DNA of 64,000 nt, taken from positions 62,001 to 126,000 of the IMG/VR virus record IMGVR_UViG_3300033143_006101. One strand, written 5' to 3'. The notes beneath the pieces are model-generated. The model was given only the letters and a program-made list of their open reading frames with translations. It was not told the DNA's origin and ran no database searches. The translations under genes and the position numbers were made by a program. Positions 1-60,149 of the stretch are shown here, piece by piece; position 1 is the first letter of the stretch; each line of letters begins with the position of its first letter.

Positions 1-3000
1 TTAACTTTAAATGACGCAGTAGAATTAGAATTCTATGGTTTTGTAGTCGGCAAATCAGATATGTATTATGGAATTACCGGTGTAGAGCTTGGCGTATTAA
101 AAACAAATAGATTAGATACCGCAGCTTTAAATACTCAATGGGAAGTTGGATATGAATATAAAATATCGGATCTTGTAATGGTAGGCCAAGGTATTTTTCG
201 TTGTGCAATAGAACATACTTCAAGTAGCAATTTTACAACAGATTTTGATGCAGCTTATTGGGAAGTTCCTTTTGAAGATGGAACTGTTACTACTGCTAAA
301 TTTGCAGAGGGTGCTATTCAAGAAATAATGGCATCAACAATTACTAACTTACGAAATAGGCTTGATGCATCAGAAAATCAACTCCTAGAAATCAGCTTAC
401 AAAATTTTTATCAATCACAACAAACAAATGTAAATGCTAATTTCTTTTTGGAAACCTTTTTAAATGAAGATAAAAATGATGCTACTTTAGAAAATTCAGC
501 TAATAATCTTGTACAAATCATGGATGATACTGACTGGAATAACAACTGGAAAGAACGAGAAGGTGTTCCTAATTTTAAAAATGGATTTATGCGTCCACCA
601 AAACAATCTTATATGTTAGAAATAATTGATGAATATAATCTTAAAGGGATTGGGCAAATTTCAAAGGGTGGAATAAGTCAATATGATACTACAAGTAATT
701 GTTATTGGTTAATGACTAATAATGGTTCTAATGGTATTGGAGAAATAGTTAAACTTTCTCATAATATGAAAGATGGGAGAGTGGAAGTATTAGATAGATG
801 GTATTTAAATGCAAAAGGAAGTAGTTATTACTGGTCAGGAATAGATTCGGATGAATCATATGTTTATGCTGTTGTACATGGAGATTCACTTTCTACATCA
901 GCTATATATTCATTTGCTATAAATTCTGATGGTACAATAGGGTATAGCCATGTTCCTAATGGAGGCACAATATATGTAGGATTAACAGGAAGTATAACTA
1001 CTGTTAATGGAAGTGATCAAATAACTGTATCTTCTACTAACCCGTATCGAGTTGGTTTAAGGATAGATGCTATTGGAATACCTGCAGGATCTTATATTAC
1101 AAAAATAATAAGTTCAACTGTATTTGAAATATCAGAAGATGCTACAGCAGATGGTTCACCTAGTGCAGAATTTAATGATTATTATAGGGCACATCCAATA
1201 GCTGCTAGTGGATCAGATGTTGGTTATTATACTGATTGTTGTATTTGGGATGAGAATGATATAATGGTGCTTGTTTGTAATGGTACAACAAATGTAAATT
1301 TAATTTCTTTAGCACAAGGTACTCTTACAACTGGGACAGCTAGTAATCAAACAGGTTTAGAAAAATATATAGGAGGATCACTATCTAAATGCAGGAGTAT
1401 AACAAAATACGGAAATGATTTATATACAAGAGTTAATGATAATACAGATACTTATAGATTTATATATAAATTTGATGTAACTACTGATATAGATACTAAT
1501 ATTTTTATAAAAGCAAGCGGAAGATGGCATACTTCAAGAAATTTTGAGCCTAGAACAGCATCCGGAGGAATAACAATAGGTTATCATGGAGATTTATTAG
1601 AAATAGAAAGTACAACTAATACTGGTGATTTTATATCTCATCGATCATTAAAGAACGCACTCTGGGCAGAGAATCAAGTAGTAGGAGAAATACAAACTAC
1701 TGCTGGGCCTACAACTGATGATAATAGAGCAATTTGTTTTGATGGCGATTATGTGTGGTATAGTGCTAATAATAATAATACAAATGCGGTAAGACTATAT
1801 AGAAGAAATGTATCTACTGGTGCAGAAACGTATACGACTGTTAATGCCGGGAATTGGGATCATATATCAGGCATGTGTTGGGATGATGTTGGAGGAACAG
1901 ATTATTTCTTCATACTCGGAGAGTCTTCGATCTCTACTGGTAGATCAATTACAAGAACAGTTTTAGAAAGTGCATTAGGAGGAACTTTAAATTTCACCTC
2001 TCCTAGTACAGAAGGTTCTCCTGTTGGGGATGGATATGATTTTGCAGCTTTCCAAACTGGAGAAACTCAATATGATATTTGTACTGACGGTACATACCTG
2101 TATATTATAAATGAAAGTATAAATACAATAGATAGATGGAATCTTTTAGTAACCCCTACTATAGAAACAGCTGGTTATATAACTATCCCTGCAGCAGGTG
2201 ATTTCTGGTCTGGGATAGCATGGAAAGATAATAAACTTTATCTTTATGAAGATCAATCAGCAAAACTAGGTAAAATCCATGTAATTGAAGATGAGCCGGA
2301 TGGTAGCGGTGACTGGTATAAAATACATTTATATCAAAGTCCAAATAGCGGAATAACAGATACATACTCAATGGATTTTGATTCTGATAATAATTTATGG
2401 CTAATGGATTATGCTAGTATGAAAATGTTTGGATTCAAAACTTTTGAAGATCCTGATGTAATGCAATTACATACTTTTATAGATTCTAATAATATACTTC
2501 TTACAGATAATGTAGCCTGCTCAACACCTATAGTAGAAAGACATTTTGATCCTGATGCATTTACTGAATGGTTGCCTGTTGATATTTATGGAAATTATGA
2601 TCCTAATAATCCTGATCATTATGGGAATATCCCTTCTCTACGAAATGTTCCTGATATGAATTATTGTGCAGTAGGATATGGAAATGAAGGATTTAGTATA
2701 CTTCATCTCGATGCATTTCTCTCTGATAAATCTACTACAGGTAAAGATAGATACGATGTTAGAAAAATTACAGTACAGCACTATGAGGAGGGTACTGCAA
2801 ATCTATTTGGGTATGATTCAGCAGGCCATGCTTATGTAAGTAGTTTATCTATTGAGCGAGATATAATTGTAGTAATAGCTAATAGTGATGATGGAATTAA
2901 TGGTGTGTATAATGTAGTGGTTGATTTAAAATCTGGAGTTGCTACATATCTTTATATATCCACTCATTCTGGTAAAATATATAATGGAACGCTTTCTGAA

Positions 3001-4059
3001 AGGAATGATGGTAAAGGTATTACTGGAGTTAGTAATTCCGAACTTAACACATCACATACCTACTATAATTATAAAAGTCATGCCCACACATTCACAAAAG
3101 AAGATGCTAGTGATTATCAGGGAGAAAATCCAATAACTTTTGTAGCTATAGGTAATGAGGGTGGTTGTGATCTTCTTAGAATAGATTGGGATGAAAATGG
3201 TAACAGAACTCCTGTTAAAGTGTGGAATAGTATATGCGAAAATGATGTATCTATGGGTCGGTATGCTTGTTGGATAGCCCCCTCGGGTTATATCTTTTTT
3301 GGGGATTACGAATCCACTGGTAATATTGCAACTCTGCAAACATCTGATACTTTAGGAGATAGCGGAGGAAGCCCATTACTTCCAGTATGGGAAGTAAATT
3401 CAAACACTCATAATAGAAAACTTATAGGTTCTAATATTCTCGGTGGTGATGCAGTAGATATAGCACCTAATAGTAGATGCTGGAAAGCTCCTTCTGGTGA
3501 ATGGAGGCATCAACTTATCTGCGGTACTTATGGTGCAGCTTCCTATAATTGGCAAACCTCTATTGTAGATGTTGAAAATGAGACTAGGGAATACATAGAA
3601 TTAAAAGGAAGTTCTGAATATTCCTCTTCAAATGTTGATATATTTGAAGACACTATTTATAGTATCGTTGAAGACAGGTATAGTACAAGTTATCCTTATT
3701 TTCTTGGAATAGCTAAAAAGTTACGATTTGATGATAACTATGCTTCTTATATGTTTAATAATTGGAGTGGAAGAAATCATTACGCCACTGGTAGTTATCC
3801 GGGAATTAGAGACGAGCATAGACCTCATTTTGTAGCATTTAGTAGTGGAGATACTGGGTATAATGCAAGAGTATGCAGATATAGTCCAGAAACTAATATA
3901 CTTACAATAGGAAGTAGCATTGCGGGACTACAACTATTTCACTTTCCTCAAATGAATAATTCGATTCAAAAAAGTATAGAAGTTACAATAGATAATCCGG
4001 AACAATTCCAATATATACAAAATTCAATATTAAATGGCAGTTTCAAGATTAATACATAG
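1..4059 (+). CDS. Large virion/tail-associated protein, 5'-truncated by the window edge; CBM5/12-like motif near N-terminus, beta-rich (propeller-like) body
   Basis: Frame is open from base 1 (no stop before ATG 61). Motif WEVGYEYKISDLV..G.IFRC..EHTS..F..D...YW resembles ChtBD3/CBM5-12. GIPAGSYITKI..TVFEIS is typical of phage tail proteins. G/S/T/D/N/Y/W-rich. Confidence 0.65.
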   Translation, partial: LTLNDAVELEFYGFVVGKSDMYYGITGVELGVLKTNRLDTAALNTQWEVGYEYKISDLVMVGQGIFRCAIEHTSSSNFTTDFDAAYWEVPFEDGTVTTAKFAEGAIQEIMASTITNLRNRLDASENQLLEISLQNFYQSQQTNVNANFFLETFLNEDKNDATLENSANNLVQIMDDTDWNNNWKEREGVPNFKNGFMRPPKQSYMLEIIDEYNLKGIGQISKGGISQYDTTSNCYWLMTNNGSNGIGEIVKLSHNMKDGRVEVLDRWYLNAKGSSYYWSGIDSDESYVYAVVHGDSLSTSAIYSFAINSDGTIGYSHVPNGGTIYVGLTGSITTVNGSDQITVSSTNPYRVGLRIDAIGIPAGSYITKIISSTVFEISEDATADGSPSAEFNDYYRAHPIAASGSDVGYYTDCCIWDENDIMVLVCNGTTNVNLISLAQGTLTTGTASNQTGLEKYIGGSLSKCRSITKYGNDLYTRVNDNTDTYRFIYKFDVTTDIDTNIFIKASGRWHTSRNFEPRTASGGITIGYHGDLLEIESTTNTGDFISHRSLKNALWAENQVVGEIQTTAGPTTDDNRAICFDGDYVWYSANNNNTNAVRLYRRNVSTGAETYTTVNAGNWDHISGMCWDDVGGTDYFFILGESSISTGRSITRTVLESALGGTLNFTSPSTEGSPVGDGYDFAAFQTGETQYDICTDGTYLYIINESINTIDRWNLLVTPTIETAGYITIPAAGDFWSGIAWKDNKLYLYEDQSAKLGKIHVIEDEPDGSGDWYKIHLYQSPNSGITDTYSMDFDSDNNLWLMDYASMKMFGFKTFEDPDVMQLHTFIDSNNILLTDNVACSTPIVERHFDPDAFTEWLPVDIYGNYDPNNPDHYGNIPSLRNVPDMNYCAVGYGNEGFSILHLDAFLSDKSTTGKDRYDVRKITVQHYEEGTANLFGYDSAGHAYVSSLSIERDIIVVIANSDDGINGVYNVVVDLKSGVATYLYISTHSGKIYNGTLSERNDGKGITGVSNSELNTSHTYYNYKSHAHTFTKEDASDYQGENPITFVAIGNEGGCDLLRIDWDENGNRTPVKVWNSICENDVSMGRYACWIAPSGYIFFGDYESTGNIATLQTSDTLGDSGGSPLLPVWEVNSNTHNRKLIGSNILGGDAVDIAPNSRCWKAPSGEWRHQLICGTYGAASYNWQTSIVDVENETREYIELKGSSEYSSSNVDIFEDTIYSIVEDRYSTSYPYFLGIAKKLRFDDNYASYMFNNWSGRNHYATGSYPGIRDEHRPHFVAFSSGDTGYNARVCRYSPETNILTIGSSIAGLQLFHFPQMNNSIQKSIEVTIDNPEQFQYIQNSILNGSFKINT

Positions 4060-15953: not shown

Positions 15954-17060
15954 ATGGCACTAGAAGAAAGAATAAAAGAATTAGTTGATTATCTTCATAT
16001 TCAACGAAAGAAGTATTATGAGGGGGAGATAGAAATTTCTGATGAAGAATTTAATGCTTTAGAAGAAGAATTGAGATCTCTAGATTCTGAGAACGAATAT
16101 TTCAAAGAAGTTGGATCTGAACCGGATACGGATAAAATAAAACATTCCTTTCCTATGCGAAGTATCCAAAAAAAGAAATCCCCAGAGAAAGTAACCAGCT
16201 GGCTTAGAAGTAGAATGGGAGATGCTATAGATGTTATAATTCAACCTAAAATAGATGGTGTATCTTTAACAAACCGATATGAGGAAAGAGAGCTTATATA
16301 TAGTGCTACCCGAGGAGATGGGGAATATGGAAAAGAAATTACAGAAGTAATCCAGCTGATAGAAGAAGTTCCTAAAGCAACATATACTATGGATCCAATA
16401 GAAATAAGGGGTGAAGTATATTTAGAAAAAGATGCTGAATATTCAAAGCAAAAGGCTCAAGAAGGTAAAGAATCACTTAGAAATATAGCGGCTGGAATAC
16501 TAAATAGAAAGCAAAATATTGAGGATGCGGTGCATCTTAACTTTGTAGCATATGATATAATAGGAGTGCCCTTTCCCAGTGAATTAGATAAATTAGAATA
16601 TTTACAAGCAATAGTACCTAATCCAATAATATATCAGAGAGCCCAGAGTGTAGAAGAAGTTGCTGCATTATGGGAACAATATAATGAAGAACGAGAGATT
16701 CTCGCTTATGAAATAGACGGGATTGTTATAAAGATAAATGATGGTAAACTAAGAGAGCAATATCAAGGAACTAATCCTCATCATTGGGGATATGAAATAT
16801 CCTGGAAATTTGAAGCAAGAAAAGAGGTTACAACACTAACAGATATCATATGGACAATTGGGGCAAAAGGCAACGAATCTCCTGTAGCCATATTCGAACC
16901 AGTTAGTATTAGTGGCAGAAATATAGAAAAAGCCACGTTACATAACCAAAAAAGAATAAATGAATTACAGCTGGAAATTGGCGATATTATAGAAGTAGGC
17001 TTGGCCGGGGATGTTATACCTAAAGTATATTCTAATCTCAGCAAAAACATAACTATTTAA
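15954..17060 (+). CDS. ligA: NAD+-dependent DNA ligase, truncated after the OB domain
   Basis: Ia domain (KYY...ISDEEF), MRSIQK, QPKIDG, EIRGEV, LRNIAAG, EIDGIVIK, WKF, ATLHN, AGDVIPKV. The stop follows directly, so there is no Zn finger, HhH or BRCT. Confidence 0.92.
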   Translation: MALEERIKELVDYLHIQRKKYYEGEIEISDEEFNALEEELRSLDSENEYFKEVGSEPDTDKIKHSFPMRSIQKKKSPEKVTSWLRSRMGDAIDVIIQPKIDGVSLTNRYEERELIYSATRGDGEYGKEITEVIQLIEEVPKATYTMDPIEIRGEVYLEKDAEYSKQKAQEGKESLRNIAAGILNRKQNIEDAVHLNFVAYDIIGVPFPSELDKLEYLQAIVPNPIIYQRAQSVEEVAALWEQYNEEREILAYEIDGIVIKINDGKLREQYQGTNPHHWGYEISWKFEARKEVTTLTDIIWTIGAKGNESPVAIFEPVSISGRNIEKATLHNQKRINELQLEIGDIIEVGLAGDVIPKVYSNLSKNITI

Positions 17061-29454: not shown

Positions 29455-30553
29455 ACTCCTACTCTATAAATCCATCTTCAGGATCAGGCTTCGCACCCTT
29501 AAATATAGGCTTCCACCACTCACATGAATGCATGGGCTTAACATAACCTATACCACTATTCTTATCTACACATCTACTCTTAGCACTATAATATGAAGCA
29601 CACGTCTTACATTCCTTATCCTTCATATACATCCTCTCCTTATTAAAATTCAGCACATTGTACTCTATGTACAAGACCACGTAAACATGGTACCCACTCA
29701 TCTAACCCCGTGTCTTCTGTCCTATACATTAACTTATTATCTATACACTTCAACCTCTCGCTAGATACCTCATCACACTTGTAATTCTCTTGTGTCAATG
29801 GACGCTTAGCAGGTCTCTCCACCATCAATATCTGCAATATAATAAAACATATCAATAGTTTCAGTCTAATATCATACCTCCAATGCTCGCCTATTCCATA
29901 TACTTATATGTCTCCTACAAAAGTATCTTCCTTCATATAAGTCTTAGCTATCAATACTTGCAAATCAGTAACTGGTTTTCCATGATATATTAATGTACTA
30001 TCCTCTGTCTCTAATGTATCAACAACTTCATTATAATATTTATAAAAACGTGCGTTAGGATCTTCTTTATTTATTATCTCTATCGCTGCATCATAAGCTT
30101 CCCTTAGAGTAAGATAAGGCATCCTATCAAATTCCTTATCACCTTGAAGATTCGATATAATTACTTCATACCTTTCTCTTGACCCTCCAGCACTCCTAAT
30201 CAAACCATCTAAATTCTTAATTTTCTTAATATCCATACCACTTCTTCCAGTTATCAATAGATAAATAATATGAATTTTTTTCCATTCTTTAAGATTTTTT
30301 TCCAATAATAACCCAAAAAGCTACTAAATGTGCACTATAAAAGATAGAGACCAGGAGGCGAAATTCACCCCCTGAAATATACCAAGGAGAAGAACTATGA
30401 CCTATATCAAACAAAATAACAAAGGTAACTGGGAAACATGGGTTAATAACTACACACAAGTGACGAGATACCTACCTATATCATACATGTCTCGTCACTC
30501 ATTACGACATAACAGTCCAGTAGTACTATCCGCTGCGGGTTATGTAATTTTAT

Positions 30554-30610
30554 AAAAAATTATTAATTTTTTATAAAATTATTAATTTTTTATAAAATTA
30601 ATAATTTTTT
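30554..30610. repeat. Three tandem 19-bp units, each containing AAAATT-N3-AATTTT (operator-like)
   Basis: Units at 30554-30572, 30573-30591 and 30592-30610, ending 2 bp before the -35 hexamer. Confidence 0.75.
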
Positions 30611-30612
30611 AC

Positions 30613-30672: not shown

Positions 30673-30834
30673 ATGAAAAAAAGATTTTATTATAATGTAG
30701 CTTGCCCCACAAAAAAAGAACGAGATAATTTAAGACAATCAGTTAAAATTCTGGCAGCAAGATTAGGGGTCAATATATGGCAAGCAATAAAAATTGCTGT
30801 AGAAACTTTTAAATATAAAAAGGAAGATAAATGA
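30673..30834 (+). CDS. Small ribbon-helix-helix-like regulator (53 aa, not in the ORF track)
   Basis: MKKRFYYNVACPTKKERDNLRQSVKILAARLGVNIWQAIKIAVETFKYKKEDK shows a strand-helix-G-helix pattern; ATGA overlap with the next gene. Confidence 0.5.
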   Translation: MKKRFYYNVACPTKKERDNLRQSVKILAARLGVNIWQAIKIAVETFKYKKEDK

Positions 30835-31475
30835 AAAATTCAAGGCAACTTAGAAAAGATTTTAAAAACGTAGGTATCCATATAAAACGATGGGAATTTA
30901 AAGAAGAAAGTACTTTTAAAAAGAGAGCAAAATCTAAAAAAATAAGTGAAAATAAATGTATTATTGAATTTTATAATTTACAAGCAGAAATACACTCAGA
31001 AACACCACGAGATATAGCTAAAGCTCTCATTAATAAATATGATAATGGTGATATTAATACTCTTCATAAATTATTAACTATGGATAAAAATAAAGGCCAT
31101 CTTACTAATTTAACAAGAGAAATATCACAAATAAATAGTGATATTGTAATGATTCCTGTATATCATATTAAATCTCCAGCAAAAGAAATAACATCTCTTA
31201 AAGTTAAACATTTAACCGTGAAACATAATACTACAAATATACAAACACATATTCCAGAGGAAATACCAAGAAATCAAAGTTTAGCAGATCTGATAATGCA
31301 ACCAGATATATTAGCATTACATTATATAAAATTTGCCAAAGGAATTATATCAAGATGTCAAAAAGGTTTAGAATTTAAAGCTATAGAATATGATGTAGAG
31401 AAAATTATTGATATATTACAAAAGATTATAAATACATATATGCCCCAAGTAGAAGAACTTAAAAATAAGCATTAA
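30831..31475 (+). CDS. Accessory protein of the RAMP-like locus (function unknown)
   Basis: 214 aa, translationally coupled to the RHH-like gene. TPRDI...LH.L..D..KG pattern recalls proteins I associate with neighbours of this phage RAMP-like family (unverified). Confidence 0.5.
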   Translation: MKNSRQLRKDFKNVGIHIKRWEFKEESTFKKRAKSKKISENKCIIEFYNLQAEIHSETPRDIAKALINKYDNGDINTLHKLLTMDKNKGHLTNLTREISQINSDIVMIPVYHIKSPAKEITSLKVKHLTVKHNTTNIQTHIPEEIPRNQSLADLIMQPDILALHYIKFAKGIISRCQKGLEFKAIEYDVEKIIDILQKIINTYMPQVEELKNKH

Positions 31476-31512
31476 GTTTAATTTTAAAATATTAGATAAA
31501 AGAGAGGACACC

Positions 31513-32295
31513 ATGACAACAAAAAAAACCAAGAAAAAGAAAAAGAAAACAGTAGTAGAAGTAGGTAAAGAATTGATGGACCAAGGAGGTCCCATTCTAG
31601 AAAACCTTGAAGAAGTCCACATAGATCCATTGGAATCTTTTTCTCTTATAGAATTTGAGTTAGGAGCTATCGGTTCTAAAGAAGTATTACAAAATAAAAT
31701 GCACGATGTACTTCTTGAAAAAAGAAGAGAAGAGTTTGAAAAGGAGGAAGATGAATAAAAAAAGGGATATGATAAAAAAAATCCGGATGTAGATTGTTTT
31801 GTAACAGCTCATTGGATTGATCCTAAAAACAAAAAAGTAGGTTTTCCAGCAATAGCTTTTAAAAAATCTTTTGTAATAGCAGCCCGTAATATTTTCGGTC
31901 CTAAAAGTAAAATGAAAACAGCTTTAGATAATGCTATTTTTGTAGTACCAACAGCAAGCCGAGGTCTTATCCCTGTAGATTATAAAAAATACAGCAATAG
32001 TATAGAACTCGGTAATCTTGGTGGACAGAAAAATAAACTATGCCCTTTCTATAGAGCAAAGTTTTCTGATTGGAACTGTAAAGTATTAGTTGTATTCGAT
32101 GAAGATGTAATCTCGTCTCGTCAATTAGTAAAAGCCGTATTAAAAGCAGGAATCTTTGGTGGTATCGGTGCATGGAGAGCAGCAAAATCAGGAACTTACG
32201 GAACCTATACAATAACAAAAATAGGCAGTCAGAGAGTAAGAGAATTGGTTAAATATACCATATCAAAAATAGATTGGGCACAATATATAATTTAA
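31513..32295 (+). pseudogene. Cas7/RAMP-like phage protein; one reading frame interrupted by a single in-frame TAA at 31756-31758
   Basis: Track ORFs 31513..31758 and 31912..32295 share a frame, which stays open after the TAA (KKGYDKKNPDVDCFVTAHWIDPKNKKVGFPAIAFKKSFVIAA). RAMP-like elements: IEFELG...LQN (beta1), GFPAxAFK helix, RAKFSDW.CKV.VVFD, and G-rich loop AGIFGGIGAWRAAKSGTYG. Confidence 0.72.
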
Positions 32296-32303
32296 CATAT
32301 AAA

Positions 32304-32570
32304 TGGATTGAACCTTAAGCGGTTTTCTTGATTCACTATCAGGCAATCCGAATTAGATAAAAGATTAGATTAGCTTAGCCAAGAATAGACCAGAGCAGAA
32401 AAGACAAGACGAGTCGGGCAGAATCTACAGCGATTATTAAGGTTCATTACCTTACTGCCCAAATTAGATAAAAGACTAGAATAGATCAGACTAGAATAGC
32501 AAAGAGCAGACTAGATTAGAACAGGAGCAGAACCTATAAGAGGTTATTGAGATTCACTATCTCACTACTC
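32304..32570 (+). ncRNA. Structured non-coding array: three tRNA-like cloverleaf units alternating with two (AGA-NN)10 tracts
   Basis: Units at 32304-32350, 32416-32460 and 32525-32570 share the same geometry with compensatory base changes. Tracts at 32351-32415 and 32461-32524 have strict 5-nt periodicity. Confidence 0.8.
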
Positions 32571-32683
32571 AAATTAAATTCCTCCTTCCCAACCCCAGCT
32601 TGCTCTTAGCTCACATGTGGACCCATAGCTACTTTTATAAGAATGTACTTGACAATTAGTACATATATATATAATAGTCATTT

Positions 32684-32878
32684 ATGGATAAATTTGATTT
32701 CGATAGAAGAAACAATAACCTCAAGTTAGCAAACAAAATAATGGACTACCTGGAAGATTGCCACATATCTGAATGGGAAGAAGGATTCTTAGAAGATATA
32801 CAACAACAACTCTAGTTCCCCTTCTTTACACTATCCGACGCTCAGAAAGATAAACTAGACACTATCCTGGATAAATAA
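32684..32878 (+). pseudogene. Small ORF interrupted by an in-frame TAG (32813-32815)
   Basis: MDKF...HISEWEEGFLEDIQQQL*FPFFTLSDAQKDKLDTILDK. The two parts together fit the small phage helical pattern SEWExxF....LSxxQxxKLxxI. Confidence 0.5.
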
Positions 32879-33151
32879 CCTTCACTCACCTCGTATGGTA
32901 TTTACATATCCTCAAATAAACGCTCCCACATCTCCCACTCCTCATCATCTATCTCCGGAATACCTTCAAAGAACATGTCTATTAGTAACTCCTCACAATC
33001 ATCCCAATCCAATACCTCACGCCTCCTGAAAAACTTCCTCAACCTCTCAAACATATCACTACCTCCTATCAGTCTTACTCTATATAAACGTAAAACTACC
33101 CCAAACCATGAACCAAAATAAACCCTCAACCTACCCCCAACTTGCCCCTGG

Positions 33152-33208
33152 CTCACTCCTAACTCGCGTATTACCCCCTCTCACTCCTAATTCACTCCTA
33201 ACTCGCGT
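33152..33208. repeat. Short direct repeats tcactcctaa(ctcgcgt)
   Basis: Copies start at 33153, 33181 and 33192. Confidence 0.7.
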
Positions 33209-33368
33209 GTGAACCGGTGTAATTAACTATGGATCCATAGTTACTTTATAAAATTATTAATTCTATTTCCAGCAAAAAATTAGTCTCACAGACAAGAGAG
33301 GCTGGGTACCCACCCGTCACCACCGGTGGTCAGATGTTGAAAGGGGTACATTATAGACCACCCTCAAT

Positions 33369-33473
33369 AATTGACCATCATCAAAAGTTGACCGGACTAC
33401 AATTGACCATCATCAAAAGTTGACTAGGCAATGACTGACCACACGGGATTATGTCCCCTGTCAAAAGTTGACC
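33369..33473. repeat. Iteron-like 24-bp direct repeats
   Basis: aattgaccatcatcaaaagttgac at 33369-33392 and 33401-33424; partial tcaaaagttgacc at 33461-33473. Confidence 0.8.
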
Positions 33474-33507
33474 TACTCAAATTTTTATGGAATAAAAGCC
33501 CAAAACT

Positions 33508-33751
33508 GTCAGTTTTTCGGAATTCCCAATACTCGGTGCAAGCTCGTCACAGGGATGGATGTCCTAGAGTTTGAGTCTGGTAAAGCAGTAATACCAGCAT
33601 AGACAGATATAGCTAATCATTAGACATATCTGTCTATGCTGGTGTTGGACTGAACAGATTTCCGGCTTTTGTCGGTTTTTCGGAATTTCCAATACTTGCA
33701 TCCAGTCAGTCTGGTTTGATAGATTGACTGCCTTATTGAGGATGGATGTCC
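33508..33751. repeat. Imperfect duplication bracketing a 15-bp-stem hairpin
   Basis: gtc(a/g)gtttttcggaatt(c/t)ccaatact at 33508 and 33671; ggatggatgtcc at 33553 and 33740; hairpin at 33596-33640. Confidence 0.7.
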
Positions 33752-34059
33752 AACAGGTAAGGTATAATAGCCCGATCTTGAAAGAGATCATAGCTGTTCT
33801 ATATGCGGGGTGAAAAGGTGCGAGAATTATGAACCGCACTATAGACTAATGATAGAGACATAGTTCTCTGTGGATTAAGACTTTCACTAACTATATATAG
33901 ACGAAGGTATGCGTCCACAAAGCCAACCTCCGGCTGAGGACTATAAACTATAGGGGGTGGGGTGATTAAGTTCACTTAAACGCCCCTCCTTTTCCCTGCC
34001 CATCCACCATGCATGTATTATGGTAGGGTGGTCAGAGATTGACCCCTTTGGAGGTTGTA

Positions 34060-34425
34060 ATGAGAAACAATTATTACAAGGAGTTTTTACAGGCTAACGG
34101 TTTGCTTTCTAAGTTTAATACTTGGAAGACAGAGCAGGTAGCAAAGAATCGGTATGACAAGATCAAGGATCAGGTTAAGTTTTATCATCTTGATTTTGAT
34201 CTGGAGAACGCATCTGTTGTGATCACTTTTGATCGTGCAGATCAGTATCCGACCGGAGATCATATTTGTTATAAAGATAACAATTGGTCTTTTGGTAGCA
34301 AGTCAACTGCTCAATCTATGAGTAAGGTTAAGACTGCTCATGGTGATTGCTATCCTATGCAAGATGCACTCCGCAAGTTGAAGTTCTTGCCTGTAGATAC
34401 AACTCACAAAGAATACCGTAGATAG
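34060..34425 (+). CDS. Hypothetical protein, first gene of the early-type block
   Basis: SD ggagg before ATG 34060. Confidence 0.6.
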   Translation: MRNNYYKEFLQANGLLSKFNTWKTEQVAKNRYDKIKDQVKFYHLDFDLENASVVITFDRADQYPTGDHICYKDNNWSFGSKSTAQSMSKVKTAHGDCYPMQDALRKLKFLPVDTTHKEYRR

Positions 34426-35146: not shown

Positions 35147-36146
35147 TTAACTGCTGTTGCTTAGGCAGCTTGACTTGTCCTAAGCAACCAGGAGTTAACT
35201 AACTCAGGAGGTTAGAGATGAAAGACCAGATACTAAATGAAGTAGCATATGGTGTCGCTAAGTATGTTAAAGACAGACGAGCAGCAAGAGATCATCGTCA
35301 TCCTCTTGCCGGTTCTATTGTAGAACCTAGCCTCATTCCTCGTCGTACATATGCTCCACTCAATTCCATTGGCAACATCATCAAAGCCAAAGGACAGACC
35401 ATTGGAGTAAAGGTAGACACAGAGTAATTCCTTTAGCTTAGCTATGGGTTTAACTATGGATCCATAGCTAAGTCTAAGCACTTATTTAATAGGAGGTAAC
35501 ATGAAAACAAGAGTGTATTGTCACAAAACTCATGGATGGAAATCTGTTGACCAACTTGGGAATATCACTGATGCTCTCAATAAAAACAGGATGACTATCT
35601 CATGTAAACGGACAACTCATGTTAAGTAAAGAAGAACGTAAGAGACTACAGAATGCCATGAGGTATATCGACATGGCCAACGAGATAACAGATAATCTCG
35701 TGAAATCTGCAAGTAAAACCTACAAAGATTATGTCACCCGCAAGTAATTTAACTATGGATCCATAGATAACTATGGATCCATAGTAAAAATTAAAGGAGG
35801 TTATATGGACGGTAATTATGTCAGCATCAATCGTAGTGTAGTAACATGTAAGAAGCAGAAAGGTGAGAGAACAGCTATAGTACACAGGGGAGCATGTAAA
35901 CAGTGTCCCTTTCATCAAGACATAAGATGTCCAAACTAAATGTTATTCGATAGGATTATGACAGAACAAAACAAAAACCACAAAACAGATTATGATAGGT
36001 TAGTACGACTGTTAGAATCTATGGGAATGAGTACAGAACAAGCAAAACTCACCTCAAAAGACAGACTCAAACAATAAGGCATTATGTTATAGTTAACTGA
36101 TATCCTATAGTCAGGATATCAGCTTACTTTAAACCAGGAGGTACTT

Positions 36147-36659
36147 ATGAGTAATGCAACAGTAGTAAACGATTCAGTTAAGGAAGCTATGGGCAAGCTC
36201 CTCAAAGAGTTAGCATCAGTTGAGGAGAAACTTATAGGTAAAACCAGTAAGTATGATGCAAAGATCAATGTTCTGAAGGCTAAGAAGGTGAAGGAAACTA
36301 AGTCTCTGGTTGAAGAACTTGTTGGTATGCAGAAACATTTACTGGAACTTGCTGAATCATATGAGTTCGATGGTGATACTAAGACAGTAAGGTATGAGAT
36401 TGGTGATGTGTTTGCCAAGAAACTACCTGATACCTTGTTGATTCCTGATGTGGATGATACTATTGAGAAACTGGAAGAGCATGACTTCGATGATTGTATT
36501 AAGAAGGTTAAGACAATCGTTCGTAAGGCAGTAGAGAATCTGTCTGATGAAGATCAAGAAGAGTGTGGTATCTCAATTAACCCAGGTAAAGACAGGTATT
36601 ATTACAAAATCAACAGACTCAAAACCTCAACTGGACTCGTATTCCCTAAATCTGAGTAA
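36147..36659 (+). CDS. gam: Mu Gam-like host-nuclease inhibitor (DNA end-binding)
   Basis: N-terminal coiled coil, then KTVRY..G.V..KK.P..L.I.DVD..IE.L......I..K.I.RK.......GI.I..G.D.YY. Confidence 0.7.
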   Translation: MSNATVVNDSVKEAMGKLLKELASVEEKLIGKTSKYDAKINVLKAKKVKETKSLVEELVGMQKHLLELAESYEFDGDTKTVRYEIGDVFAKKLPDTLLIPDVDDTIEKLEEHDFDDCIKKVKTIVRKAVENLSDEDQEECGISINPGKDRYYYKINRLKTSTGLVFPKSE

Positions 36660-54098: not shown

Positions 54099-55319
54099 AT
54101 GCAAGAAATTTACATGGAAAAAACTAGCGAGACTGGTGCAAAACTATTCTATGAGTATAAGATAGAAGAAAGCACTGTAAAATTTCGCTGGGGGCAGATT
54201 GGCAGTGACAACATTCAGTCTGATGAACGAACCTTTACAGAAGGTAAGAACATTGGTAAGAAGAATGAGAAGAGTCCGGAACAATGTTGTATAGAAGATA
54301 CGGCGAGAAGGGCTCGGAAGAAACATGAGCAGGGTTATGAAATTATCAAGGGTGAAGGATTTGTTATAGCTAACACAGGTAAAACTGTAAAGGCTACAGA
54401 TCTGAGTGTACCTAAACCCATGAAAGCTCAGACTCTTAAAGACCATTGGAAGAAAATGGATGGAGTTGACGAAGTATACTTCCAACCTAAGCTCGATGGT
54501 AATCGTGGTCTAATCAATATACGAACTGGAAAGATGTATTCCAGTGGTAGAAAAGAGATGACACATTTGCCTGAGATAGTTGAACAAGTAGTAAAAGCTT
54601 GTGAGCCTATCAAAGATGAAGTTGAATGGGTAGACGGTGAATTGTATTCACCCAAGCTTGTATTCAATGACCTTCAGTCTGTACTCAGTACATGGAAGAA
54701 CACTGAGAAAGAAGGACTTGCAGAATTACGGAAAGAAGTAAAGTTCTATTTGTTTGATGTCATATCAGACAAGCCTTTTAGTGAAAGGTTAGAGTTTATT
54801 AAAAAGCTCGAGTCAAATGATAAACTACAAATAGTAAAGACTATTGTAGGTCATCCACACGAAGCAATAGGTAGTCAGGATGACTTCATAGAACTACCTG
54901 AAGGAGTTGTTAGTCTTCATGATGTATTCATTGAAGAAGGTTATGAAGGTATTATGATTCGTACTGTCAAAACTTTAGTACGGAAGGACTGGGTAGATAA
55001 ACCATACGAATCCAAACGCTCTATGCAAATCTTCAAACACAAACTGTTTGATGATGAAGAGTTTGAAGTTATTGGTTTTGAGCCCGAAGAACATGACCCT
55101 ACAAAATTAGGGGCAGGAGTATTGAGGATGAAGAATGATGACACATTCCCTGCCAGACCTGCAATGACTGACGATTATAAAGCAGAGATATGGGCTAATC
55201 AAGATAAGTTTATTGGTCGATTAGCTACTATAAAATTTCAAGGTAAGTTTGCAGACACAGGCAAACCGAGGTTCCCCAGGTTAACCAAGTTCAGATTACC
55301 TGAGGATATTACTGAATAG
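54099..55319 (+). CDS. lig: ATP-dependent DNA ligase with N-terminal WGR-like domain
   Basis: RWGQIG and KKxEQGY (WGR-like); QPKLDGNR, DGELY, FYLFDV, EGYEGIMIR, KRS..IFKHK, KPRFP. Confidence 0.92.
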   Translation: MQEIYMEKTSETGAKLFYEYKIEESTVKFRWGQIGSDNIQSDERTFTEGKNIGKKNEKSPEQCCIEDTARRARKKHEQGYEIIKGEGFVIANTGKTVKATDLSVPKPMKAQTLKDHWKKMDGVDEVYFQPKLDGNRGLINIRTGKMYSSGRKEMTHLPEIVEQVVKACEPIKDEVEWVDGELYSPKLVFNDLQSVLSTWKNTEKEGLAELRKEVKFYLFDVISDKPFSERLEFIKKLESNDKLQIVKTIVGHPHEAIGSQDDFIELPEGVVSLHDVFIEEGYEGIMIRTVKTLVRKDWVDKPYESKRSMQIFKHKLFDDEEFEVIGFEPEEHDPTKLGAGVLRMKNDDTFPARPAMTDDYKAEIWANQDKFIGRLATIKFQGKFADTGKPRFPRLTKFRLPEDITE

Positions 55320-60082: not shown

Positions 60083-60149
60083 TTGGTTTACCCCACATTG
60101 CTATGGATCCATAGTAGTGTGGTGCAAATTTTTTATAAGGAGGTATCAT

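What the first reader, a model, noticed from the sequence alone, without database searches (positions are those of the whole stretch)
32351..32524. Two ~65-nt tracts of ten (AGA-NN) pentamers with variable dinucleotides: a possible gapped guide code
Seen: both tracts start with the leader AATTAGATAAA. Tract 1 (32362-32411) triplets are AGA,AGA,AGC,AGC,AGA x6 with NN = TT TT TT CA AT CC GC AA CA CG, then AGTC. Tract 2 (32473-32522) is AGA x5,AGC,AGA x4 with NN = CT AT TC CT AT AA GC CT TT AC, then AG. Equal unit number, an invariant triplet and freely varying NN do not fit slippage microsatellites, which homogenise whole units. Inference: each triplet is gripped by one protein subunit, and the 20 variable bases per tract specify a target, contiguous or gapped (e.g. 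NN-x-NN-x, which would skip codon wobble positions).
Basis: partly seen in the sequence, partly recalled or inferred. Interest (0 to 1): 0.92.

Follow-up and report, generated by a model that had tools for sequence, protein, structure and literature searches.

The report
VIPR guide-RNA array in jumbo phage
The two tracts are the guide parts of two VIPR RNAs, a recently described phage system in which a small CRISPR-like protein reads the variable bases of a five-base repeat to find rival DNA. The kind is already known, and this copy is a new member with an AGA repeat and a broken protein gene.

Summary
Window 32362-32415 and 32473-32524 each carry 11 in-register AG at period 5: ten AGA/AGC+NN units, then AG. 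Both follow AATTAGATAAA. No shuffle of the window exceeds 7 of 10, and no other site in the 64 kb resembles them.

The tracts sit directly downstream of a homologue of Vipr, the minimal RAMP protein of VIPR systems (bioRxiv 10.64898/2026.04.26.720920). A family profile that includes the window's protein hits the solved SUSP1 Vipr at E 1.6e-23. An intact relative models as a Cas7-like fold. Each tract is flanked by a conserved Y-shaped RNA element supported by compensatory base changes. A related jumbo phage has the same three-part module with four tracts whose NN strings are unrelated to these.

What is new is modest: an AGA/NN rather than GGY/NN repeat, a three-way-junction tail, a 253-kb phage, and a vipr gene interrupted by an in-frame TAA.

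I found no natural target above chance. Exact 10-NN patterns gave 0 hits in viral and genome collections and 2 chance-like hits in metagenomes.

The parts
30831..31475 (+). Candidate vipr-accessory gene (vap), 214 aa, function unknown
   Evidence: It lies directly upstream of vipr. It is 42% identical over 207 aa to the gene in the same position in the relative (L165:5348-5974, E 2e-58). This gene and vipr are the only two genes shared between the two loci. There is no Pfam or PHROG hit. The AF2 model is unusable at pLDDT 42.
31513..31755 (+). vipr, N-terminal piece (81 codons): Lys-rich extension plus the first strand of the RAMP core
   Evidence: It aligns to residues 3-71 of the intact relative P0002 (E 8e-12). 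It is in the same reading frame as the next piece.
31756..31758 (+). In-frame TAA that interrupts vipr
   Evidence: Read directly (GAA GAT GAA TAA AAA AAG). tblastn of P0002 runs through this position without a gap, residues 8-245 at 50% identity. The relative has sense codons here.
31759..32295 (+). vipr, C-terminal piece (178 codons plus stop). It contains the conserved R..W motif and the glycine-rich loop GIGAWR....YGTY. The first ATG is only at 31912.
   Evidence: It matches SUSP1 Vipr (PDB 36pp_D) at E 8.4e-4 on its own. Profile A1, which includes it, gives E 1.6e-23 over residues 4-188 of 202. It is 55% identical to P0002. It also hits phrog_4652.
32304..32350 (+). Y-shaped RNA element (copy 0) upstream of the first tract. 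It has a 6-bp closing stem GGATTG/CAATCC and two hairpins.
   Evidence: It folds to the same three-way junction as the other copies. It is a member of direct-repeat family D2, which has 111/110-nt spacing.
32351..32361 (+). Leader AATTAGATAAA of vrRNA 1
   Evidence: It is identical before both tracts. AATTAGTTAWA precedes all four tracts of the relative.
32362..32415 (+). vrRNA 1 guide tract: 10 AGM-NN units plus AGTC. NN = TT TT TT CA AT CC GC AA CA CG (TC).
32416..32461 (+). Y-shaped tail of vrRNA 1 (GGGCAG...CTGCCC closing stem, two hairpins)
   Evidence: MFE -16.6 kcal/mol, z -5.3, with the same fold as the relative's tails. Nine of 12 consensus pairs carry compensatory changes.
32462..32472 (+). 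Leader AATTAGATAAA of vrRNA 2
32473..32524 (+). vrRNA 2 guide tract: 10 AGM-NN units plus AG. NN = CT AT TC CT AT AA GC CT TT AC (GA).
32525..32583 (+). Y-shaped tail of vrRNA 2 (32525-32571), followed by a degenerate leader AATTAAATTCCT with no further tract

Best explanation
Window 30831-32583 is a VIPR (Viral Interference Programmable Repeat) module of a 253-kb jumbo phage. It consists of a candidate accessory gene, the vipr gene (a minimal Cas7-like RAMP), and an array of two about 111-nt vrRNAs.

Each vrRNA has three parts: a short leader, a guide tract of 10-11 pentamers, and a Y-shaped 3' tail. In each pentamer A-G-(A/C) is fixed and the last two bases are free.

The following steps are inferred by analogy with the experimentally studied SUSP1 system. 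Vipr subunits polymerise along the tract, one per pentamer. They hold the fixed triplet out of pairing and present the NN dinucleotides. The NN dinucleotides read double-stranded DNA in a gapped register, two paired and one skipped. The bound complex blocks transcription of a rival phage, prophage or satellite. The flanking Y-shaped elements most likely mark processing sites and cap the guide.

Shown here: homology of the protein, the architecture and hypervariability of the RNA, the RNA-level conservation of the tail, and conservation of the module in a relative. Inferred: binding stoichiometry, the skip rule for this AGA type, the targets and the processing sites.

The window's vipr has an in-frame TAA. 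As assembled, this copy either makes no full-length Vipr or depends on readthrough. Its vrRNAs may then be inert, or usable only by a Vipr supplied in trans.
For: Protein:
- L097 Vipr hits PDB 36pp_D 'SUSP1 Vipr protein' at E 4e-19.
- The window's C-terminal piece hits it at E 8.4e-4 across the G-loop.
- Profile A1 (the window piece plus three relatives) gives E 1.6e-23 over nearly the whole chain.
- The family is large, with 5,147 representatives at E<=1e-3, mostly about 190 aa.
- The AF2 model of the intact relative P0002 (pLDDT 77, pTM 0.70) matches Csm3/Cmr4/type VII Cas7 RAMPs at probability 1.00 and E down to 3e-6.

RNA:
- Unit statistics are and uniqueness within the window.
- All six tails fold to the same three-way junction.
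- Nine of 12 consensus pairs show compensatory changes.

Comparative:
- The relative (L165/L181) has the same gene pair followed by four tracts with the same tail. Its NN strings are unrelated to the window's, at 2-3 shared NN, which is chance level.
- All 19 viral loci with Vipr relatives show at least one run of 9 or more in-register G at period 5 within the about 2.5-kb flanks. Where the Vipr match sits near 2501-3250, most runs begin a few hundred bases to 2 kb from it. In the GC-rich loci such runs are less distinctive.
- Among 113 loci picked by the AG pattern alone, Vipr homologues occur only in five of the 29 non-coding loci.

No self-target was found in the window, as reported for known VIPRs. 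The mechanism and family definition come from 10.64898/2026.04.26.720920 and 10.64898/2026.10.15.759431.
Against: No natural target was found above chance.
- Exact 10-NN patterns with a one-base skip gave 0 hits in IMG/VR for both guides.
- They gave 0 hits in 596 Gb of species genomes for both guides.
- Guide 1 gave 2 metagenome hits, in unrelated genes and not wobble-aligned.
- 8-NN seeds gave 12 and 10 hits, with no extension beyond 9 of 11.

Other points against:
- The repeat is AGA, not the published GGY, so the decoding rule could differ.
- vipr is interrupted by a stop, and the downstream ATG has no Shine-Dalgarno sequence.
- The accessory gene has no recognisable DNA-binding or nuclease domain.
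- No expression data exist for this phage.
Confidence: 0.92

Rival explanations
1. Decayed or 'solo' array. The kind is VIPR, but this copy no longer has its own effector because vipr is a pseudogene. The two vrRNAs are either inert relics or are loaded by a Vipr made by a co-infecting relative. This resembles the published VIPR-null phages that keep orphan vrRNAs.
For: There is an in-frame TAA at 31756-31758 inside an otherwise conserved frame. The next ATG (31912) lacks the strong AGGAGG site that most genes here have. Orphan vrRNAs in vipr-less phages are documented. The array itself is intact.
Against: There is only one lesion, and both halves are otherwise open and conserved at 50-55% identity. 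The stop could therefore be very recent, a minority variant, or an assembly error. No read-level data are available. The published solo cases arose by deletion, not by a nonsense codon.
Confidence: 0.4
2. Binding site or sponge for an 11-subunit ring RNA-binding protein of the TRAP kind. TRAP binds 11 NAG triplets separated by 2-nt spacers, which matches 11 in-register AG per tract.
For: Each tract has exactly 11 AG at period 5. The strong AGGAGG ribosome sites suggest a Firmicutes-like host. The TRAP site geometry is from my own knowledge, not from a tool result.
Against: The relative's tracts have 16-20 units and include TG and GG units. The count of 11 is therefore not conserved. Only 5-6 of the 11 first bases are G or U. 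None of the ORFs scanned against Pfam or PHROGs gave a TRAP-like hit, but only part of the window's ORFs were scanned. The adjacent gene is a RAMP with a solved Vipr relative.
Confidence: 0.02
3. DNA-level iterons of a replication origin. Many phage genomes carry AG-period-5 tracts inside DnaD-like replisome-organizer genes, where origins are known to lie.
For: About 60 of 113 viral loci with (AGNNN)x10 have the tract inside DnaD-like genes. The literature places ori repeats in such genes. The window's tracts lie in a repeat-rich 1.7-kb non-coding region.
Against: Compensatory changes in the flanking stems show selection on RNA structure. The tracts are strand-specific. They are linked to vipr, not to a replication gene. 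None of the DnaD-type loci has a Vipr homologue in the fetched flank.
Confidence: 0.03
4. Chance or slippage microsatellite with no function.
For: Pentamer microsatellites are common in viral contigs.
Against: There are 10 different NN among 20 units with an invariant AG. Shuffles never exceed 7 of 10. The architecture is conserved in a relative with different NN.
Confidence: 0.01

Closest known systems
VIPR systems (Vipr protein plus vrRNA), type II as in Escherichia phage SUSP1 and a Pseudomonas fulva prophage (bioRxiv 10.64898/2026.04.26.720920; 10.64898/2026.10.15.759431; PDB 36pp)
   Same: The following features are shared:
- a small RAMP protein homologous to SUSP1 Vipr
- a phage-borne minimal module of two genes plus an array
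- about 100-nt RNAs made of 9-16 pentamers with a fixed triplet and two hypervariable bases
- a conserved structured tail
- no self-target
   Different: - The fixed triplet is AGA/AGC rather than GGY. The paper mentions NNNGG, YNNNG and NNNNG variants without giving their details in the text I could read.
- The tail is a Y-shaped three-way junction rather than a pseudoknotted tail.
- A copy of the tail element also precedes the first tract.
- Vipr has an about 45-aa Lys-rich N-terminal extension and about 25 extra C-terminal residues.
- The presumed accessory gene lies upstream and is unrelated to anything annotated.
- The host phage has a 253-kb genome with Firmicutes-type ribosome sites.
- vipr is interrupted by a stop.
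AG-type VIPR arrays of other low-GC phages found here (L097/L191/L192, L194-L196, L062)
   Same: A Vipr homologue sits next to non-coding tracts with AG every 5 nt and variable bases between.
   Different: Their fixed triplet is AGT (YNNAG), not AGA. Their tails differ. L097 has tRNA-minihelix-like tails. L062 has a short AGTTATATCCCAAC punctuation.
Class 1 CRISPR-Cas backbone (Cas7/Csm3/Cmr4 on crRNA)
   Same: The RAMP fold is shared. The AF2 model of the relative matches Csm3/Cmr4/type VII Cas7 at probability 1.00. Subunits repeat along a guide RNA, with periodically unpaired bases.
   Different: The period is 5 with 3 unpaired bases, against a period of 6 with 1 flipped base. There is no CRISPR repeat-spacer array, no Cas1/Cas2, and no other cas genes nearby. 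The guide information is non-contiguous.
TRAP (trp RNA-binding attenuation protein) sites: 11 (G/U)AG triplets with 2-3-nt spacers
   Same: AG recurs every 5 nt, with 11 copies per tract in the window.
   Different: The unit number is not conserved in the relative. The first base of the triplet is not G/U-biased. No TRAP-like hit appeared among the ORFs scanned. The associated protein is a RAMP.

Membership tests
VIPR system | A Vipr protein (minimal RAMP homologous to SUSP1 Vipr) is encoded next to the repeats | tested here: met
   Profile A1, which contains the window's C-terminal piece, matches PDB 36pp_D at E 1.6e-23 over residues 4-188 of 202. The piece alone gives E 8.4e-4. The gene ends 8 nt before the first RNA element. 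Caveat: the gene carries an in-frame TAA.
VIPR system | RAMP hallmarks: RRM-like core, glycine-rich loop and thumb | tested here: met
   The G-loop GIGAWR....YGTY aligns with SUSP1 GVGDWRPRFGRF. The family-invariant residues R, W, G and G are present. The AF2 model of the intact relative matches Cas7-family RAMPs at probability 1.00 and TM about 0.5. The thumb was not delineated residue by residue.
VIPR system | vrRNA guide: 9-16 tandem pentamers with a conserved motif alternating with hypervariable NN | tested here: met
   Each tract has 10 full units plus a partial eleventh. Positions 1-2 are invariant, position 3 is A 17 and C 3, and positions 4-5 have 1.7-1.9 bits of entropy. The motif is AGM rather than GGY. 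The paper allows 'a related consensus' and NNNNG-type repeats.
VIPR system | An invariable, structured 3' tail follows each tract | tested here: met
   All six tails from the two phages fold to the same three-way junction. Nine of 12 consensus pairs have compensatory changes. No pseudoknot was tested.
VIPR system | NN strings differ between guides and between related loci (programmability) | tested here: met
   The best in-register NN sharing between window and relative guides is 2-3 units. Only the relative's paralogous tracts A and C share 10 of 17. A and C differ mostly at position 4 (7 of 12 differences), then position 3 (3), with one each at positions 1 and 5.
VIPR system | An accessory vap gene is present in the module | tested here: inconclusive
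   A syntenic conserved 214-aa gene lies directly upstream. It has no domain hit and no usable model.
VIPR system | Guides match rival mobile elements by the one-base-skip rule, above chance | tested here: inconclusive
   Full 10-NN patterns gave 0 hits in viral and genome collections and 2 chance-like hits in metagenomes. The best partial match is 9 of 11 NN, wobble-aligned, in a tail-lysin-like gene of three related phage contigs (L207-L209). Seed hit numbers (10-12) are not above a rough chance estimate.
VIPR system | No self-targeting | tested here: met
   No match in the 64-kb window exceeds the shuffled guides at skip 0-3. Only a quarter of the 253-kb genome was available.
VIPR system | vrRNAs are expressed, processed to about 100 nt and bound by Vipr; the RNP binds dsDNA and represses transcription | not testable with these tools
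   This needs small-RNA sequencing, pull-down and binding or reporter assays.
VIPR type (I-VII) | Placement in the authors' Vipr phylogeny together with vap identity | not tested
   The reference tree and type representatives are not available here.
TRAP-binding RNA | About 9-11 (G/U)AG triplets, and a TRAP protein in the phage or host | tested here: not met
   Only 5-6 of the 11 first bases are G or U. The unit number is 16-20 in the relative. None of the window ORFs that were scanned gave a TRAP hit, but the scan covered only some ORFs.
CRISPR array | Identical direct repeats separated by unique contiguous spacers, with cas genes nearby | tested here: not met
   The repeated 41-nt elements are only 63-76% identical. 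The 'spacers' are themselves pentamer repeats. No cas genes other than the lone RAMP appeared among the neighbours scanned.

The most novel reading that the evidence does not exclude
AGA-type VIPRs may decode differently from the GGY type. Position 3 varies in the relative and between its paralogous guides, so three bases per unit may be read, or the skip length may differ. Separately, this phage may keep working vrRNAs while its own vipr is knocked out, using them as 'guns for hire' on a co-infecting relative's Vipr. Either would extend the published rule set.
Probability: 0.15. Interest if true: 0.6.

Novelty: new member of a known kind. Interest (0 to 1): 0.4.

Why it matters
VIPR was described only in 2026. 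It is proposed as the ancestor of CRISPR effector complexes and as a very small programmable DNA-binding platform.

This locus adds a divergent member, with an AGA/NN repeat, a three-way-junction tail, a Lys-rich Vipr and a jumbo phage of a Firmicutes-type host. It comes with an intact close relative, which gives a natural pair for testing whether the two-read-one-skip rule holds outside the GGY types.

The work also yields a practical caution. Pentamer periodicity alone does not identify a vrRNA. About half of the viral loci that matched the (AGNNN)x10 pattern lie inside DnaD-like replication genes and have no Vipr nearby.

The nonsense codon in vipr, with the array still intact, may be a snapshot of how VIPR-null phages carrying solo vrRNAs arise.

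Tried and rejected
- Rfam, gathering thresholds on the whole window and E-value mode on 32200-34100: nothing relevant.
- tRNA scan of the window: none.
- blastn and tblastn against deposited phages: no match.
- Stop-codon reassignment as the reason for sparse ORFs: not supported.
- TRAP-like sponge: this was my first idea from the 11 AG. I dropped it when the relative showed 16-20 units and the neighbouring gene proved to be a RAMP.
- Replication-origin iterons: suggested by the DnaD-gene tracts. I dropped it because of RNA-level covariation and the linkage to vipr.
- Leader-based DNA scan (TTAGATAAAAGANNAGANNAG): found only the source contig.
- Target searches. Local searches at skip 0-3 and width 2 or 3 against the window and the relative's module used shuffled controls. 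They showed no self-targets or cross-targets.
- Accessory gene: the homology search found only itself and the AF2 model was too poor to search.
- r1t replisome-organizer paper: not held in the library.
- Pfam on Vipr proteins: no family.

Full report
**Observation**

Tract 1 (32362-32411) is AGATT AGATT AGCTT AGCCA AGAAT AGACC AGAGC AGAAA AGACA AGACG, followed by AGTC. Tract 2 (32473-32522) is AGACT AGAAT AGATC AGACT AGAAT AGCAA AGAGC AGACT AGATT AGAAC, followed by AG. Each is preceded by AATTAGATAAA.

Counted as dinucleotides, each tract has 11 AG in perfect 5-nt register. Elsewhere in the 64 kb no position on either strand has more than 6 of 10. In 200 shuffles of the window the maximum is 7 of 10.

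Over the 20 full units, positions 1 and 2 are invariant and position 3 is A 17 and C 3. Positions 4 and 5 carry 1.88 and 1.68 bits of entropy. TAG codons fall in all three frames and no ORF crosses the region.

**Context**

The window comes from IMG/VR contig 3300033143_006101, a 252,876-bp phage. GC is about 33%. Most genes have strong AGGAGGT ribosome sites, which indicates a Firmicutes-type host. The genetic code is standard.

The tracts belong to a three-fold repeat with 111/110-nt spacing (family D2). They lie directly after an ORF on the same strand. Rfam has nothing here.

**How the identification was reached**

A scan of IMG/VR for (AGNNN)x10 returned more than 113 loci. These fell into three groups:
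- true microsatellites
- about 60 tracts with mixed units lying inside 230-310-aa ORFs
- 29 tracts outside any ORF of 100 aa or more, roughly half of them exact microsatellites and the rest with very diverse units, like ours

The second group are DnaD-like replisome-organizer genes (L012, phrog_5708, E 4e-72). Origins of replication are known to lie in such genes.

In the third group, the gene directly upstream of the tract in L087 and L097 is homologous to the window's upstream ORF. The L097 protein hits one PDB entry, 36pp, 'SUSP1 Vipr protein', at E 4e-19. That led to two 2026 preprints describing VIPR systems.

**What VIPR is, from the papers**

Vipr is a minimal RAMP of about 20 kDa encoded mostly in phages and prophages. 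Its vrRNAs are about 100 nt. They consist of 9-16 pentamer repeats in which a conserved GGY alternates with hypervariable NN, followed by a conserved structured tail. Variant repeats (NNNGG, YNNNG, NNNNG) exist.

The NN dinucleotides pair with double-stranded DNA with one target base skipped per unit. The skipped base usually falls on codon wobble positions. Binding silences transcription of rival phages or satellites. Loci usually hold vipr plus one accessory gene (vap). No self-targets were found. Some phages have lost vipr but keep solo vrRNAs.

**Membership tests here: protein**

The window's gene is one reading frame, 31513-32295, interrupted by TAA at 31756-31758. I searched its pieces separately.
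- The C-terminal piece matches SUSP1 Vipr at E 8.4e-4 across the glycine-rich loop.
- A four-sequence profile containing it gives E 1.6e-23 over residues 4-188 of 202.
- The N-terminal piece matches residues 3-71 of an intact 247-aa relative, P0002, at E 8e-12.
- tblastn of P0002 runs through the stop without a gap.

The family has 5,147 representatives at E<=1e-3, mostly about 190 aa. An AlphaFold model of P0002 (pLDDT 77, pTM 0.70) matches Csm3, Cmr4 and type VII Cas7 subunits at probability 1.00.

**Membership tests here: RNA**

Each tract is followed by an element of about 46 nt that folds into a three-way junction. The junction has a 6-bp closing stem and two hairpins.

The three copies in the window and three in the relative all give the same minimum-energy fold independently, with z-scores from -2.3 to -5.3. 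In the alignment, 9 of 12 consensus pairs keep pairing through changes on both sides. This shows selection on an RNA, not on DNA.

One copy also precedes the first tract. In L097 the first tract follows the vipr stop directly and each tract is followed by a tail. The arrangement tract plus 3' tail, as published, is therefore the likelier unit. That gives about 111 nt per vrRNA here.

**Comparative evidence**

The relative phage (L165/L166/L181; contigs up to 235 kb) has the same order: a 208-aa gene, vipr, then the array. The 208-aa gene is 42% identical to window 30831-31475. The array holds four tracts of 16-20 units of [A/T]G[A]NN, the same leader and tail, and then a terminator.

These two genes are the only ones shared between the two loci. 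NN strings are unrelated between the phages, whereas two paralogous tracts in the relative share 10 of 17 NN. Those paralogues differ mostly at position 4 (7 of 12 differences), then position 3 (3).

All 19 IMG/VR loci with Vipr relatives show at least one run of 9 or more in-register G at period 5 within the about 2.5-kb flanks. The high-GC loci are GGY/NN, several low-GC loci are AGT/NN, and ours and its relative are AGA/NN. In the GC-rich loci such runs are less distinctive. Conversely, among the 113 AG-pattern loci only five non-coding ones have a Vipr homologue.

**Targets**

With the one-base-skip rule, the full 10-NN patterns gave no hit in IMG/VR for either guide. They gave no hit in 596 Gb of species genomes for either guide, where about one chance hit is expected.

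Guide 1 gave two hits in the metagenome collection. These are in unrelated genes, a SusC-like receptor gene and a capsid-like gene. In both, the skipped base falls on codon position 1 or 2. I read them as chance.

Eight-unit seeds gave 12 and 10 hits. The best is a 9 of 11 NN match, wobble-aligned, in a 1,510-aa tail-lysin-like gene of three related low-GC phage contigs (L207-L209). It would pass the 80% threshold used in the paper. However, the seed hit counts are not above a rough chance estimate, and I could not run shuffled controls on the collections.

Local tests at skip 0-3, reading two or three bases per unit, showed no self-targets or cross-targets above shuffles. The target question stays open.

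**Rivals**

My first idea was a TRAP-type 11-mer binding site. It fails because the unit number is not conserved and the partner gene is a RAMP. A DNA-level origin is contradicted by the RNA covariation and the vipr linkage. A microsatellite is excluded by unit diversity.

The live alternative is about state, not kind. With vipr interrupted and the next ATG lacking a ribosome site, this copy may be a recent pseudogene whose vrRNAs are relics or act in trans. The stop could also be an assembly or minority variant.

**Verdict**

This is a real feature and a member of a known kind, the VIPR systems published in 2026. The new points are modest:
- an AGA/NN repeat
- a Y-shaped tail that also flanks the array upstream
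- a Lys-rich N-terminal extension on Vipr
- an unannotated upstream accessory gene
- a jumbo-phage setting
- a nonsense codon in vipr

Confidence that it is a VIPR vrRNA array is 0.92. Confidence that it is functional with its own protein is much lower.

Noticed in passing
window 31756-31758: vipr is a single conserved frame (31513-32295) broken by one in-frame TAA. The intact relative has sense codons there. The A-run after the stop cannot rescue it by slippage, because T followed by at least two A always remains.
   Followed up: partly
window 32684-32878: A small ORF (43 aa, promoter-like TTGACA at 32649) continues in the same frame after a TAG at 32813-32815 for 20 more codons (FPFFTLSDAQKDKLDTILDK). 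This is a second gene with an in-frame stop within 1.2 kb of the first.
   Followed up: no
window 32575-33215: A stretch of about 640 nt is C/T-rich and almost free of G on the + strand, with imperfect repeats such as CTCACTCCTAACTCGCGT. It contains only a doubtful 84-aa ORF on the - strand. Its function is unknown.
   Followed up: no
window 33352-33473: There are four copies of TCAAAAGTTGACC inside 17/32-nt tandem repeats. They look like iterons or clustered -35 boxes. Together with a 28-nt inverted repeat at 33590-33646, they lie in a 1.7-kb region (32296-34038) without convincing genes.
   Followed up: no
window about 33226-33241, 35750-35784, about 60100-60116: The palindrome CTATGGATCCATAG recurs, once as a tandem pair. 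It is possibly an operator for a phage regulator, or a terminator stem.
   Followed up: no
L012:3715-3781 and about 60 other loci (e.g. L018, L028, L042, L060, L074, L104): AG recurs every 5 nt for 10-15 units inside DnaD-like replisome-organizer genes. The AG is kept while the encoded residues change (Ser/Arg, Ile/Leu, Gly/Asp/Val, Lys). This indicates a constraint at the nucleic-acid level. No Vipr homologue lies in the fetched flanks. These are probably the in-gene origin repeats described for TP901-1, Tuc2009 and SPP1, but the 5-nt AG rule itself seems worth a look.
   Followed up: partly
L097:2540-2775 (also L191, L192): This is a VIPR array with AGT/NN units whose tails resemble tRNA minihelices, with an acceptor-like stem plus a T-arm carrying a GTTCGATTC loop. 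The first tract starts directly after the vipr stop codon. ARAGORN calls no tRNA. The resemblance suggests processing by tRNA-maturation enzymes. That differs from the hammerhead-interspersed arrays mentioned in the paper.
   Followed up: partly
L062 (- strand, about 3270-3800): A long array of at least 8 AG-period-5 tracts is punctuated by AGTTATATCCCAAC. It lies next to a Vipr homologue that is 66% identical to P0004.
   Followed up: no
window 30540-30611: A 19-nt AT-rich unit (TTATTAATTTTTTATAAAA) is repeated 3.7 times. It lies at the switch between the leftward (17.6-30.3 kb) and rightward gene blocks.
   Followed up: no
window 15954-17060 and 54099-55319: The same phage segment encodes both an NAD-dependent and an ATP-dependent DNA ligase. 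It also encodes a Mu Gam-like protein at 36147-36659.
   Followed up: no
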